Shown piece after piece: positions 56,761-61,292 of a stretch of 64,000 nucleotides of DNA. The stretch is taken from assembly GCF_000315625.1 (NCBI RefSeq), contig NW_005434654.1, positions 556,632 to 620,631 of the forward strand. The letters are read 5' to 3'. Numbering within the stretch: position 1 is the first letter of the stretch; each line of letters starts with the position of its first letter. The translations under genes were made by a program, and so were the position numbers. A model generated the notes under the pieces. That model did not search any database and was not told the DNA's origin. It saw only the letters and a list, made by a program, of their open reading frames with translations. The DNA comes from Guillardia theta CCMP2712. Its lineage: Eukaryota; Protista; Cryptophyta.

Positions 56761-57867
56761 CTTCAACGTGGGGTACTGTCGACCTTTCCTTGGTATGATG
56801 AGCACTCGAATCTTGTTGTCGGAGATGGACTTTCTCACAATCATGCAGGTCAAGTCCATGAAGCTGAAGAAGTATTTGATTGCACGACGCAAGGAAGAAG
56901 GTCTGATGGACGAGAGCGAGGAGTCGAGCGATGTGGCCCGGCAATAAAAGCCCGGACAACCTTTCTTCTTATTCTGTGCTGATCAGCATTGTTGCAAATT
57001 GTCAGTCCATGCAATCTAGATGCTAAACTTGTGTGGCTATTCCTCTCGGTCCTACAATTCGTCACGCAGTGTTGGCTGTCAAACAGTGACTGCCCGGCGG
57101 TTCCGCCCGGCGATGACGGCGGCGACGGACCGGATGATGGAACGAAGCTGAAACCGTTGAACGGAGTCATACAAACTTGAAATCAGTAAAGCCGCTGCTA
57201 GTGCACCTGTTTCAACCGAGAACAGTTGTGACATCACTGAAAGTCATCGGAAGTGTCCGGCCCGCCATAGTTTCAACGTGAGAGGGCGCCTAGGGGCCCG
57301 CGGCGGCCTGGGCGCAGGAGCGGCCGGCCCGTCCCTGGCGGCATCATCATCGCCGAGTCGGGCGGCCTGAGACCGGCGCGGCCCGGGCCCAGTGCCGCTG
57401 TCACCCGGAAGCGGCCGCACTACTACCCCTTCTAGGCTTGAATCACCCCGCCGCCGGCCGCCCCGCGGGGCCCGGGGCCGCGCGCGGTGCGCCGAGTCGG
57501 CCCACTGAGGAGTCACAGTCACTGAGTCACCTATGCACAAGAGGGAGCAGACTGAGAAGTTCGGAGACGGTTCGGGAAGAACTTGAAAAGCCTCTCGGAG
57601 ATTCGGACTGAACTCGGAAGGCTCGTCAAGAAGCCGCAGGGTCGCGGGAGTGGTGAAAGTGCGGGGATGTGGTTGCATTTGGGGCGGATCCATTTCAATT
57701 TACAGCAGAGATTTGAAGTTCAAGGAACAAAAATCAGGATTCTTTTCAAATCTACAAAATTGTAAAAAGGGGGCACAATGCATCGCTGAAGGTTGGTCGG
57801 AGGTTGGTTGGGGTGAGGGACGAAGGGATCTCGATAGGGAAGCGAGAACAGAGGATGAGAAGGACGA

Positions 57868-58012
57868 GGAGAGGGAGAGGAAGAGGGAGAGGAAGAGGGA
57901 GAGGAAGAGGGAGAGGGAGAGGGAGAGGGAGAGGGAGAGGGAGAGGGAAACGGAGTGGGAGCGGAAGGGAAAGAGAACGAGAACGAGAACGAGAACGAGA
58001 ACGAGAACGAGA
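57868..58012 (+). repeat. Purine-rich microsatellites (GAGAGG)n and (GAGAAC)n upstream of the FAS1-GrpE gene
   Basis: Seen directly in the sequence. Confidence 0.9.
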
Positions 58013-58121
58013 AAGGGACAAGTACAAGCAAAGAAACAGGGGCAGCATGTAGGTCTTCCTAAGACCTTCTTGAACAGGTAATTCTGGGTTTCTGTGGGAG
58101 AAAGACATCAAAGAGAGGAGA

Positions 58122-60690
58122 ATGCGGAGTTTTTCATTCTTATCGTACGCGGCCTTCCTTTTCAGCTTGATCGCAACCTGTGAGTCAATATTCTAACATC
58201 TTAATTTCTGATTGCACCAAAGGCCATGGTTTCGTCAATACTCGGCTGCCTTCCACACTTCACGTGCTCACTGTGACGACGAGCTGGACGTCATCTGAGA
58301 TTTGTCACAGTCCGAATCCAAAATTCACCTTCGAACGAGACGAGGGCTGCCCTTGTGCCAGGCACAGCCTTCGCAGGTTGAGTCTGCAGGGCCAAAACTG
58401 GGCGAAAAGGCCAAGAATCTCATCAAGTCATCGTCATCGGCCGTGCAGAGCTTCTTCAATCGGGTGAATTTTTCCCTGACCAAACAAAAAACAGGCTCAC
58501 TTTTGCTTGCATGGTGCCAACAGTTTCGGAAGCCAAATGAAGAAGACATGTTTAAGGACAGAATGGACATGATGGCGTCTTTGTCAAAGATGAACAGGTT
58601 TCAAACTGTTTTGGTGACTTCCTTGCACTTATCAATATTCAGCTTGACAGCAGAATTCAGCATTTTAATTTCTGCTCTCAATGCGACAGGTTTGAAGTGT
58701 AATTATCATCTTTTGTAAGCATCAACTTTACCTAGGCTTAGCTGAGACGCTCAGCAACGGCAATGAAACGTGGACATTCTTTGCTCCGTCGAACAGCGCT
58801 TTCAGCAAGGTATACTGATCCCCGGACAATCGCAAAGTTAATAATAGTCCTTGTGAAGCTTCCTAAAGACTGCCTGTTGTGGGAATGCATCGAAAATTTG
58901 CAGGTCCCTCCTGAAGGCAGGAAGCAAGTCTTGATGGAAGAGTTGAAACAGTTTCTGTTGGGAAGGTCCGCAGATCTTCGCTTCTTCGTGTTTTGACTCC
59001 ATGTAGCCTTGTCAAGGGCCGCTGGTCCATCGACAAACTGAATGGGAGATATGAAACATTGTCCTCCGCACGAGGACGAAAGGTTGTTACAGATCTTCGC
59101 ACAGGTGAAGTGTTGGAAGGTCGATGAGGGTCCTGAATTTTCAATCAGCCACCACCCCCTCTGACTACACGGACTATGTGTTGGACGAAGAGATTAAGCA
59201 GAAGGAACGTGTTTGTTGCGCTGATACTTGTCGTGCCCAATGAGTGACAGGAAGGACAGGTCAAGAAATGCAACGCTGTCATCATCTACTCGGCAGATTT
59301 GCAGTGCAGCAACGGAGTCGTTCACATCGTTGACAGGTGCATGGTTGGATGAATCGATCGCCATATGTGATCCATGTTTCAGCTTGCTGGATGGGATATG
59401 CCCTTTGATCTACTCTCCTACACAGATCTCCTTGAAGTGATTCGCACACTTCTTATGCTCAGATTTGTTCACTCGTTGTCGCAGCATTTCGTCTTACCCT
59501 GAGTTGCGCGCTCGCGCAGACGAGTTAGAGTCTCGTGTCCTCGAAACTCGCGCGAGGTACCAGGAGTTGGAGACTGAGATTCGTCCCTTGAACGAGCTGG
59601 TGAGGAGGAGCGCAGGTGTGGCAGGGTGTGAGGTTGGCTCGCTCAGGTGGAGGACAAGAAGTTGACGAGGCCGTCCTGCAAGGAGCTGTCCGTTACGTAC
59701 GAGCGACTGGCCACGGACTTTGAAAACTTCAAGACCAGGTGAAGTCCCACTTGCCGAGTTTGCTGCTGAGGCACGGTCACAGGTCAGAGCAAGAGCTGGC
59801 TACAGCTAGAGAGTCTGCCGCTGCAGATGTGACGTCAAACCTGATGAAGGTACCCTAGTCTCCGATGCTTTTTCTCTTGTGTGAAGCTTTCCAACCCCCA
59901 AGGTGCTGGACTCGTTGGAACGAGCTGAAAGTTCCTTCAACTTACAAACAGACAGGGAAAAGGAGATAGTTTCATCCTACAAGGTCGGCCCCTGATGCCC
60001 TGCTGAGTGCCTGACCTCCTCTTGTTGGTATCCAGGAAGTTGATTCCCTCCTTCTTGCCATCCTTGAGCAACAGGTGATTCGATCCTCTCACCACAGCCC
60101 TCCTTACCCGCCTTCGACTCAAGGGAGTGGCTACCATCGAGTCTCTGGGGCAGAAGTTTGACCCTCTCAAGCACGAAGCTGTCTCGCAGCGACCTTCGTC
60201 GGAGCATCCCGATGGGTTCGTGGCCGAGCAGTTCCAGCGGGGATACATGGTGGGCAAGAGGTGAGGGCGAGCTGGAAATCTCTTGCGCTGGCAGGCTCCT
60301 TGACTCTTACCAGGGTGGTCCGACCAGCTCTTGTCGTCGTCTCGAGCGGCCCAGAGCAGCAAGAGCCTGCGGGTGTCCCTGAGAAGGGAGAGGAAGCAGA
60401 AGCAACGACGGAGGTCGGTGAAACAGCAGCATTGGCAGACAAAGATCAACAGGAAGGGTCGACGGTAATCATTGACAGAACCTTTCAAGATGTATATAAA
60501 TCCATTTCGACGAAAGGAAGGAAAACAAGTGCAAGACGGAGGAAGGTGAACCCTGGGAGCTCCGAGACCCGTGAGTGTGCTGCTGTTCCTGGCTCTTTCC
60601 GCTGACTGGCTCGCCTGGTGCTGCAGGATGGGATGGAAGATCTCGCGAGAACTTCAAGGGTCGAATGGTCAACCAGCGCAAGAAGTAATT
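58122..60690 (+). CDS. Plastid-targeted fasciclin (FAS1) - GrpE nucleotide-exchange-factor fusion (multi-exon; 3' end approximate)
   Basis: Bipartite leader MRSFSFLSYAAFLFSLIATCHG/FVNT...; FAS1 motifs FSILISAL, WTFFAPSNSAF, DLQCSNGVVHIVD; GrpE motifs RLATDFENFKTR, VLDSLERA, IESLGQKFDPLKHEAV, QRGYMVG-RVVRPALVVVS. Confidence 0.8.
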
Positions 60691-61052
60691 CGATGAATAA
60701 AAGGTGTAACAAAGTTTATGATGAACACCACACATGTCTCCATCGGTCTCCGTCCCTTCTCTTGTAATTTCTTCTACACGCCTATACGTCTCACCGCCTC
60801 GCTCCTCGTGCTTCCCGGCAACTCATCAGCCCTGCAAGAGTTCTGATCGTCGATAGCGATGGTGTGGCGTTGAAGCGATGGTGGTACTTGAGGTGGTGCT
60901 TGGTACCAGTAAGTTGCTACTTTAAATCATGAGCCTTGGTCATTGGCCGCCGCGCGGTGGCAGGCGTGTAGATTTGAAAAATCTGAGGCGGGTTCCATCA
61001 TTCGGTGGCGGGAATGGATGGAGTCGAAGGAATGGCAGGAGTGCGAGGAGGG

Positions 61053-61292
61053 GAACAGCTGAGGGAGGGAAAGAGCAGCTGAGGGAGGGAAAGAGCAGCT
61101 GAGGGAGGGAAAGAACAGCTGAGGGAGGGAAAGAACAGCTGAGGGAGGGAAAGAGCAGCTGAGGGAGGGAAAGAACAGCTGAGGGAGGGAAAGAACAGCT
61201 GAGGGAGGGAAAGAACAGCTGAGGGAGGGAAAGAACAGCTGAGGGAGGGAAAGGGCAGGTGAGGGAGGGAAAGAACAGCTGAGGGAGGAGGA
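61053..61292 (+). repeat. 20-bp tandem repeat (GA[A/G]CAGCTGAGGGAGGGAAA) x~12
   Basis: Near-perfect units ending a few nt before the ATG at 61300. Confidence 0.95.

What the first reader, a model, noticed from the sequence alone, without database searches (positions are those of the whole stretch)
58122..60690. Plastid-targeted fasciclin (FAS1) - GrpE co-chaperone fusion
Seen: exon 1 (58122-58179) and exon 2 (from 58223) give a signal peptide ending CHG followed by Phe, then a Ser/Thr/Arg-rich transit-like segment. A full FAS1 domain follows (H1 WTFFAPSNSAF ~58770; H2 DLQCSNGVVHIVD ~59300). It continues in frame through introns 59337-59382 and 59437-59484 (VHIVDS-LLDGICPLIYSPTQISLN-ISSYPELR) into the coiled coil and beta domain of GrpE, with no stop or separate leader between them. 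Known: +1 Phe marks stromal import in complex red plastids; GrpE is the nucleotide-exchange factor of DnaK/Hsp70; FAS1 domains are mostly extracellular or luminal, and algal AstaP uses one to bind carotenoids. Inference: an Hsp70 exchange factor carrying a ligand- or pigment-binding or localisation module. I know no described FAS1-GrpE fusion.
Basis: partly seen in the sequence, partly recalled or inferred. Interest (0 to 1): 0.82.

Follow-up and report, generated by a model that had tools for sequence, protein, structure and literature searches.

The report
FAS1–GrpE fusion co-chaperone gene
A cryptophyte nuclear gene really does make one spliced mRNA that joins a fasciclin (FAS1) domain to a plastid-type GrpE, the exchange factor of Hsp70. 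The same fusion is kept in a sister genus and I found no paper on it, but what the extra domain does is unknown.

Summary
In three RNA runs from three studies, a single intron-less contig of about 1.7 kb crosses the whole locus. Each removes both introns that link the halves (59337-59382 and 59437-59484) in frame.

- **Protein:** the spliced window protein equals a 517-aa MMETSP ORF (P0151) residue for residue. It has a signal peptide ending CHG|F, a basic Ser/Thr-rich transit-like region, a Fasciclin domain (aa 113-264, 56.8 bits) and a GrpE domain (aa 298-467, 126.5 bits).
- **Second isoform:** a 562-aa form (P0273) retains intron 60465-60516.
- **Conservation:** Hanusia phi has the same architecture. 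FAS1 is 84 % and GrpE 88 % identical, against 38 % for the signal peptide.
- **Origin of the GrpE half:** it groups with GrpE of cyanobacteria, a red alga and a green alga (95 % SH-aLRT).
- **Distribution:** no other FAS1+GrpE protein turned up among the 150 best GrpE hits or in the word searches. A related alga has a stand-alone GrpE with a similar leader.
- **FAS1 half:** it is a generic FAS1 fold (Z 16-18) and not especially AstaP-like.

Stromal location, nucleotide-exchange activity and any docking or ligand role are inferred, not shown. I found no paper on the fusion. I rate it a new variant of a known kind, of moderate interest.

The parts
57771..57791 (+). 3' end of an upstream 5'UTR exon; the transcription start lies further upstream and is not mapped
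   Evidence: A 19-nt loose end of the X3 contig matches window 57771-57789
57792..58077 (+). 5'UTR intron (GT..AG, 286 nt) holding two hexamer microsatellites
58122..58230 (+). Signal peptide, aa 1-22 (MRSFSFLSYAAFLFSLIATCHG), interrupted by intron 58180-58222
   Evidence: Hydrophobic core at aa 6-19, with Cys at -3 and Gly at -1; joint seen
58231..58233 (+). Phe23, the +1 residue of the transit-like peptide
   Evidence: Phe also follows the predicted cleavage site in Hanusia (GNC|F)
58231..58463 (+). Transit-peptide-like region, aa 23-84: net charge +7, Ser-rich, predicted disordered; includes intron 58264-58310
58653..59389 (+). FAS1 (Fasciclin, PF02469) domain, aa 113-264, spread over 8 exons
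   Evidence: Pfam 56.8 bits; structure model and fold matches at Z 16-18
59205..59259 (+). Non-canonical GA..AG intron inside the FAS1 region
   Evidence: none of the equivalent cut positions gives GT or GC at the 5' end
59337..59382 (+). Intron between the last FAS1 exon and the linker exon
   Evidence: Joint 59333/59380 (cut +3) in X1, X3 and X5
59383..59436 (+). 54-nt linker exon (SLLDGICPLIYSPTQISL) joining the two halves
   Evidence: the linker is 73 % identical in Hanusia
59437..59484 (+). Intron between the linker exon and the first GrpE exon
   Evidence: Joint 59436/59485, GT..AG, in X1, X3 and X5
59537..60344 (+). GrpE domain (PF01025), aa 298-467: long helix, helical bundle and beta domain
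   Evidence: Pfam 126.5 bits; PDB 4ani E 2.6e-21; model pLDDT 83-96 apart from one 10-residue block at 65
60465..60516 (+). Alternatively spliced intron: removed gives 517 aa, retained gives 562 aa
60547..60549 (+). Stop codon (TGA) of the 517-aa isoform
60571..60626 (+). Last intron: in the 3'UTR of the short isoform, coding in the long one
60688..60690 (+).
60696..60761 (+). AATAAA at 60696-60701, and the 3' end of the RNA contigs at about 60714-60761

Best explanation
This is one nuclear gene of a cryptophyte, most likely Guillardia theta. That name is inferred from the closeness to Hanusia phi and from the MMETSP source; the run names were coded.

**What it encodes.** A plastid-type GrpE nucleotide-exchange factor whose usual variable N-terminal tail is replaced by a single FAS1 domain plus a short conserved linker.

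**Shown here.**
- One spliced mRNA and one open frame.
- Two C-terminal isoforms.
- Both domains intact and kept in a sister genus.
- The GrpE half descends from the cyanobacterial/plastid lineage.

**Inferred route.** The signal peptide takes the precursor into the ER. The transit-like peptide with Phe at +1 then takes it across the inner membranes into the stroma.

**Inferred function.**
- The GrpE half dimerises through its long helices.
- Its beta domain opens the nucleotide cleft of the plastid-encoded DnaK/Hsp70.
- This speeds ADP release.

**More speculative.** Two FAS1 domains would sit at the far end of the paired helices, the position from which the tail of bacterial GrpE reaches the Hsp70 substrate-binding domain. 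From there they could dock the exchange factor onto a particular plastid complex or client, or modulate substrate release. Other intracellular FAS1 modules hold large assemblies together in a comparable way.
For: **Single transcript.**
- Single intron-less contigs of 1666-1720 nt in X1, X3 and X5 (three studies) cover 58076-60761 at their widest.
- DNA runs hold 0.83-0.99 of the unspliced words, against 0.42 for these runs.
- The model equals P0151 exactly, and P0273 is the intron-retaining isoform.
- There is no in-frame Met between the FAS1 N-terminus and aa 370, so no complete GrpE can start internally (protein sequence).

**Domains.**
- Pfam Fasciclin 56.8 bits and GrpE 126.5 bits.
- The GrpE half of the model has pLDDT 83-96, apart from one 10-residue block at 65.
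- The best solved-structure match is GrpE 4ani, E 2.6e-21.
- The FAS1 fold matches at Z 16-18 with rmsd of about 2 A over about 130 residues.

**Conservation.** The Hanusia phi ortholog P0001 has the same architecture. Identities are FAS1 84 %, linker 73 %, GrpE 88 %, signal peptide 38 % and tail 48 %.

**Plastid type.**
- The best NCBIfam model is PRK14143, 145 bits against 99 for the next.
- The fusion sits in a 95 % SH-aLRT clade with Synechococcus elongatus, Phormidium, the red alga Hildenbrandia and a sequence whose cluster holds the green alga Polytomella.

**Leader.**
- Hydrophobic core, small residues at -3 and -1, Phe at +1 in both genera, and a basic Ser-rich segment with no second hydrophobic stretch.
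- The role of +1 Phe in separating stromal from periplastid proteins is described in PMC12136025.
- dnaK is plastid-encoded in cryptophytes (PMC5534331).

**FAS1 inside organelles and cells.** Solved examples are red-algal phycobilisome linkers, cyanobacterial CupS and a Toxoplasma mitoribosome protein.
Against: - No localisation, activity or partner data exist, and no dedicated predictor (SignalP, ASAFind) could be run.
- The raw-read RNA run X17 gave only 3 reads, so transcript ends, minor internal starts and isoform ratios are unmeasured.
- The NCBIfam score is below the equivalog cut-off (145 against 184).
- The fusion pair sits on a long stem branch (1.17), so the GrpE half has diverged.
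- The YH motif of FAS1 is missing.
- The FAS1 half folded poorly in the whole-protein model.
- I could not search this genome for a second, stand-alone plastid GrpE.
- The docking role has no direct support.
Confidence: 0.7

Rival explanations
1. Precursor polyprotein: the fusion is made as one chain but is cut in the linker after import, releasing an ordinary stromal GrpE and a separate FAS1 protein.
For: One leader serves two domains that work alone elsewhere. A related alga has a stand-alone GrpE with the same kind of leader (P0130). The linker is predicted to be poorly ordered up to about aa 278.
Against: The linker is better conserved (73 %) than the transit region (66 %) or the tail (48 %). 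It runs straight into the long GrpE helix from about aa 285. I saw no repeated processing motif. To my knowledge, polyprotein precursors are not known from cryptophytes.
Confidence: 0.1
2. Different destination: the protein stays in the ER or secretory path or the periplastid compartment, or goes to mitochondria. The FAS1 part would then act as a classical adhesion domain.
For: Most studied FAS1 proteins are extracellular. Targeting here is read from sequence features only.
Against: GrpE works only with DnaK-type Hsp70. In cryptophytes that means the plastid-encoded DnaK in the stroma, and the mitochondrial Hsp70 (the latter is established knowledge, not tested here). The GrpE half is of plastid/cyanobacterial type, not close to mitochondrial GrpEL1 (E 5e-10 against 2.6e-21 for bacterial 4ani). 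Phe at +1 is kept in both genera. The GrpE half is 88 % conserved, so it is in use.
Confidence: 0.1
3. Two adjacent genes are joined only by read-through or by an assembly artefact, and the real proteins are separate.
For: A Hanusia genome-based gene model (P0002, 330 aa) contains only the GrpE half. Contigs cannot prove single molecules.
Against: Only about 150 nt lie between the domains. That stretch consists of two spliced introns and a 54-nt in-frame exon. It leaves no room for a stop, a 3'UTR, a promoter and a new leader. Three studies plus two MMETSP assemblies and the Hanusia transcript give the same join. P0002 contains translated intron sequence, so it is a mis-prediction. The GrpE half has no start codon and no leader of its own.
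Confidence: 0.03
4. The FAS1 half is a ligand or pigment carrier (carotenoid as in AstaP, or a bilin), so that Hsp70 cycling is coupled to pigment delivery.
For: AstaP proteins are FAS1 proteins that bind carotenoids, and they do appear among the matches. The domain has lineage-specific inserts and a conserved set of cysteines.
Against: The AstaP matches are weak (E 0.04-0.5 by sequence; Z 12.7-14.5). They rank below TGFBIp, periostin, phycobilisome linkers, CupS and the mitoribosomal FAS1 protein. Nothing here tests binding.
Confidence: 0.07

Closest known systems
Chloroplast GrpE homologues (Chlamydomonas CGE1, Arabidopsis CGE1/CGE2)
   Same: Both are nuclear-encoded, of cyanobacterial descent and plastid-directed, and carry a full GrpE domain. 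CGE proteins are the exchange factor of stromal Hsp70 and act as dimers (PMC6987454). The tree places the fusion in a clade that includes a green-algal sequence whose cluster holds the Polytomella GrpE homolog.
   Different: CGE proteins have only a transit peptide and a short variable N-terminus. Here about 150 residues of folded FAS1 domain plus a conserved linker precede the long helix. The leader is bipartite (signal peptide plus transit peptide). The lineage sits on a long branch.
Bacterial GrpE (Geobacillus 4ANI, Thermus 3A6M, E. coli 1DKG)
   Same: Alignable over the helices and the beta domain (E 2.6e-21 to 2.7e-8), with the FDPxxHEA and RPAxV blocks kept.
   Different: Bacterial GrpE starts with a short disordered tail. 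From my own knowledge, in E. coli that tail influences substrate release from DnaK. In the fusion a globular domain occupies that position.
Intracellular FAS1 modules: red-algal phycobilisome linkers LRC6/LR9, cyanobacterial CupS of NDH-1MS, Toxoplasma mitoribosomal FAS1 protein / Plasmodium HDP
   Same: A single FAS1 fold working inside a plastid, a cyanobacterial cell or a mitochondrion as a structural contact within a large complex (PMC6811547; PMC13451264). Foldseek's best match is 5y6p_A1 at E 1.2e-8, and VIA-align gives Z 15.7-16.2 for these proteins.
   Different: None of them is joined to a chaperone cofactor. Sequence identity is only 18-26 %. No subfamily relation is resolved, because TGFBIp scores as high or higher (Z 18).
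AstaP carotenoid-binding FAS1 proteins
   Same: FAS1 fold from a microalga (Z 12.7-14.5).
   Different: Weakest of the FAS1 matches by sequence (E 0.04-0.5). There is no evidence of a carotenoid tunnel or of binding.
Other GrpE fusions seen here
   Same: The GrpE domain tolerates N-terminal additions: P0033 joins a type II/IV secretion ATPase to GrpE, and P0003 is a tandem double GrpE.
   Different: The partners are different and there is no FAS1. Their organisms are unknown.

Membership tests
GrpE (PF01025) | Profile match above the curated cut-off over nearly the whole model | tested here: met
   126.5 bits against a cut-off of 25.8; profile positions 6-164 of 165
GrpE (PF01025) | Fold made of a long N-terminal helix, a helical bundle and a C-terminal beta domain | tested here: met
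   The model has helices at 285-325, 327-382 and 388-410 and strands at 413-467, with pLDDT 83-96 apart from one 10-residue block at 65. It aligns to solved GrpE 4ani, 3a6m and 1dkg
GrpE (PF01025) | Forms a homodimer and speeds nucleotide release from DnaK-type Hsp70 | not testable with these tools
   Needs purified protein and DnaK
Plastid/cyanobacterial GrpE lineage (CGE type) | Groups with GrpE of cyanobacteria and primary plastids in a tree | tested here: met
   An 11-row clade with 95 % SH-aLRT holds Synechococcus elongatus, Phormidium, Hildenbrandia and a sequence whose cluster holds Polytomella. This was a quick tree of 70 sequences, most of them unnamed
Plastid/cyanobacterial GrpE lineage (CGE type) | Reaches the equivalog cut-off of the best NCBIfam model | tested here: not met
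   PRK14143 scores 145 bits against a cut-off of 184. It is still clearly the best model, the next being 99 bits. I did not verify that PRK14143 is the cyanobacterial model
FAS1 / Fasciclin (PF02469) | Profile match above the curated cut-off | tested here: met
   56.8 bits against a cut-off of 22; profile positions 2-121 of 123
FAS1 / Fasciclin (PF02469) | Conserved H1 and H2 blocks | tested here: met
   T-F-FAPSNSAF and NGVVHIVD are invariant against 11 bacterial FAS1 proteins
FAS1 / Fasciclin (PF02469) | YH motif between H1 and H2 | tested here: not met
   The relatives have YHVV where the fusion has FLLGSLV
FAS1 / Fasciclin (PF02469) | FAS1 fold | tested here: met
   Z 16-18 with rmsd of about 2 A over 126-136 residues against TGFBIp, periostin and phycobilisome linkers. 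The model is of moderate quality: pLDDT 67, pTM 0.70
AstaP-type carotenoid-binding FAS1 | Specific similarity to AstaP and carotenoid binding | tested here: inconclusive
   Similarity is no better than to other FAS1 proteins (E 0.04-0.5; Z 12.7-14.5). Binding is not testable here
Bipartite stromal targeting signal of complex red plastids | N-terminal signal peptide with small residues at -3 and -1 | tested here: met
   Hydropathy is 1.7-1.9 over aa 6-21, with C-H-G before the predicted cut; Hanusia has G-N-C. This is a heuristic reading, not SignalP
Bipartite stromal targeting signal of complex red plastids | Aromatic residue (Phe) at +1 of the transit peptide | tested here: met
   Phe23, and Phe at the same place in Hanusia. 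The criterion is taken from PMC12136025
Bipartite stromal targeting signal of complex red plastids | Experimental import into the stroma | not testable with these tools
   Needs GFP fusion or cell fractionation

The most novel reading that the evidence does not exclude
The FAS1 domain is a built-in address. It would tether the stromal Hsp70 exchange factor to one particular plastid assembly, such as a thylakoid-associated complex, the import motor or the ribosome, so that Hsp70 cycling is sped up only at that site. Alternatively it replaces the substrate-release tail of GrpE with a folded regulatory module. Either would be a kind of co-chaperone specialisation not described for any GrpE.
Probability: 0.25. 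Interest if true: 0.7.

Novelty: new variant of a known kind. Interest (0 to 1): 0.55.

Why it matters
GrpE proteins are thought of as plain, untargeted exchange factors; in the Hsp70 system specificity usually comes from J-proteins. A conserved GrpE that carries a folded protein-contact domain at the end that faces the Hsp70 substrate-binding domain suggests that an exchange factor can also be localised or specialised.

The fusion also adds a case to the growing list of FAS1 domains that work inside organelles rather than outside cells.

The case is easy to test, because both halves can be expressed with and without each other. The known range is narrow (two sister genera) and the function is unknown, so the general importance is uncertain.

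Tried and rejected
- **Whole spliced protein as a query.** It could not be given by reference. I searched with one 45-aa exon instead, which returned ids for the Hanusia protein and then for the window's own protein.
- **Genome-contig scan with the GrpE half.** It gave only three unrelated bacterial loci, which was no use for origin.
- **ESM Atlas feature search.** No usable hit.
- **Raw-read run X17.** Only 3 reads, so there is no strand, end or isoform information.
- **Origin of the FAS1 half.** Foldseek put red-algal phycobilisome linkers first. The second aligner put TGFBIp first, and the sequence search favours TGFBIp and CupS. I therefore dropped the idea that the domain descends from a phycobilisome linker.
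- **Pfam on the transit region, the linker and the long-isoform tail.** Nothing found.
- **Earlier notes of this scan.** Nothing on GrpE or fasciclin in this genome.
- **Thylakoid-lumen targeting.** I considered it and rejected it. There is no hydrophobic stretch after the RR at aa 43-44.
Full report
**Observation**

The region was read directly. It has the look of an intron-rich eukaryotic gene. Run searching found ten runs that hold about 0.42 of the stretch's words and four DNA runs that hold 0.83-0.99. That is the pattern expected if the first group holds spliced RNA.

I laid three of the first group on 58030-60950: X1, X3 and X5, from three studies and two organism labels. Each gave one contig of 1666-1720 nt, and together they cover 58076-60761 with every intron removed. 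The joints include 59333/59380 and 59436/59485.

The raw-read RNA run X17 gave only three reads and adds nothing.

**Gene model**

From the joints I rebuilt the mRNA.
- Nineteen introns of 41-60 nt lie downstream of the ATG at 58122. Eighteen interrupt the coding sequence; the last is in the 3'UTR of the short isoform.
- A 286-nt intron lies in the 5'UTR (57792-58077).
- All are GT..AG except 59205-59259, which can only be read as GA..AG.

A 54-nt exon that the table did not list was placed at 60517-70. I used the depth bins, the canonical splice sites and the Hanusia C-terminus to place it.

The resulting 517-aa protein is identical, residue for residue, to P0151, a complete ORF from an MMETSP transcriptome. 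A second MMETSP ORF, P0273 (562 aa), equals the same model with intron 60465-60516 retained.

The peptide coded by the retained intron (VI[IL]DRTFQDVYKSISTKGRK) also appears in a Hanusia gene model (P0002). The long tail therefore seems conserved too.

**What the protein is**

- **Domains.** Pfam finds Fasciclin at aa 113-264 (56.8 bits) and GrpE at aa 298-467 (126.5 bits). Single exons already hit both families.
- **N-terminus.** It has a hydrophobic core, then C-H-G, then Phe. A basic, Ser-rich, disordered stretch follows, with no second hydrophobic segment.
- **GrpE half.** It aligns to solved GrpE structures (4ani, E 2.6e-21). It is modelled with pLDDT 83-96, apart from one 10-residue block at 65, as long helices plus a beta domain.
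- **FAS1 half.** Folded alone it gives a moderate model (pLDDT 67, pTM 0.70). That model matches FAS1 structures at Z 16-18. It keeps the H1 and H2 blocks but lacks the YH motif. It carries inserts with conserved cysteines.
- **No internal start.** There is no in-frame Met between the start of the FAS1 half and aa 370. The GrpE half also has no leader of its own. A separate, complete GrpE cannot be made from this mRNA.

**Relatives**

A search of 1.84 billion representatives with the 45-aa beta-domain exon found one full-length relative, P0001 (512 aa). A follow-up search named it as Hanusia phi, UniRef A0A7S0E9L6, 'GrpE protein homolog'.

P0001 has the same layout: a signal peptide ending GNC|F, then FAS1, then GrpE. 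Identity by part is signal peptide 38 %, transit region 66 %, FAS1 84 %, linker 73 %, GrpE 88 % and tail 48 %. Both domains and the linker are therefore under constraint as one unit.

I found no other FAS1+GrpE protein.
- None of the other 148 best GrpE hits matches the N-terminal 300 residues. Eight of the longer ones, scanned with Pfam, show no Fasciclin.
- Word searches with the whole protein, with the GrpE half and with the FAS1 half found no further fusion and no closer ortholog.
- These searches have limits. The word index reaches only fairly close relatives, and the representative library collapses clusters at 50 % identity.
- P0130, an MMETSP protein of 263 aa, is a stand-alone GrpE with a leader ending CKA|F. 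Related algae therefore manage without the fusion.

**Origin of the halves**

The best NCBIfam model for the GrpE half is PRK14143 (145 bits, the next being 99), though this is below the equivalog cut-off.

In a 70-sequence tree the fusion pair sits in a 95 % SH-aLRT clade. Cluster look-ups name four of its members, directly or through cluster mates.
- Synechococcus elongatus.
- Phormidium.
- The red alga Hildenbrandia rubra.
- The green alga Polytomella parva, a cluster mate of P0111.

This is the plastid/cyanobacterial lineage. The stem branch is long (1.17).

The origin of the FAS1 half is not resolved.
- The nearest sequences are small bacterial-type FAS1 proteins at about 30 % identity.
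- Foldseek ranks red-algal phycobilisome FAS1 linkers first.
- A second aligner ranks TGFBIp first.

**How it most likely works**

*Shown:* one gene, one mRNA, one reading frame, two C-terminal isoforms, and conservation of the whole layout.

*Inferred from established knowledge:*
- The bipartite leader with Phe at +1 directs the protein to the stroma. Periplastid proteins lack that residue (PMC12136025).
- dnaK is plastid-encoded in cryptophytes (PMC5534331), so the only fitting partner is there.
- Chloroplast GrpE homologues act as dimeric exchange factors of stromal Hsp70 (PMC6987454).

*Speculative:* the FAS1 domains sit at the tip of the paired helices. They may dock the factor to a specific assembly or modulate substrate release. 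FAS1 modules that hold large intracellular complexes together are documented in red-algal phycobilisomes (PMC6811547), in cyanobacterial NDH-1MS (6tjv) and in apicomplexan mitoribosomes (PMC13451264). The AstaP-style pigment idea has no specific support.

**Rivals**

- Cleavage into two proteins after import: about 0.1.
- Another destination: about 0.1.
- A pigment carrier: about 0.07.
- An artefactual join of two genes: about 0.03.

**Novelty and verdict**

Paper searches for fasciclin with GrpE, Guillardia with GrpE and Guillardia with fasciclin found nothing on the fusion. The sequence is public but is annotated only as a GrpE homolog.

It is a new variant of a known kind: a real, conserved and so far lineage-restricted domain architecture with untested function. 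Interest is moderate, 0.55.

**Limits**

- No signal-peptide or plastid-targeting predictor was available.
- The genome could not be searched for a second plastid GrpE.
- The organism name is inferred.
- The RNA status of the Logan runs is a guess by the tool, although intron-less contigs can hardly come from DNA.

Noticed in passing
window 59205-59259: This intron of the gene is GA..AG. None of the equivalent cut positions gives GT or GC at the 5' end. The splice is confirmed by three RNA contigs, by P0151 and by the identical Hanusia peptide.
   Followed up: partly
window 60465-60516: This intron is alternatively retained. Retention switches the C-terminus from a 10-residue tail (517 aa) to a 55-residue strongly basic tail (562 aa). 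The retained-intron peptide is conserved in Hanusia, so both ends may be functional.
   Followed up: partly
window 57868-58013: Two hexamer microsatellites, (GGAGAG)x15.7 and (GAACGA)x7.5, lie inside the 286-nt 5'UTR intron.
   Followed up: no
window 61053-61288: A 20-nt unit (GAACAGCTGAGGGAGGGAAA) is repeated 11.8 times between this gene and the next plus-strand ORFs.
   Followed up: no
window 58122-60549 (aa 154-267 of the protein): The FAS1 half and linker carry five cysteines conserved in Hanusia, including C154-x3-C158 inside an insert that bacterial FAS1 proteins lack. This could be a redox or metal site.
   Followed up: no
P0033 and P0003 (hits): Other unusual GrpE architectures turned up among the GrpE hits: a type II/IV secretion ATPase fused to GrpE (700 aa) and a tandem double GrpE (397 aa). 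Their organisms are unknown.
   Followed up: no
P0002 (Hanusia phi, EukProt gene model): This genome-based model of the Hanusia ortholog holds only the GrpE half and contains translated intron sequence. It shows how the fusion can be missed in annotations.
   Followed up: partly
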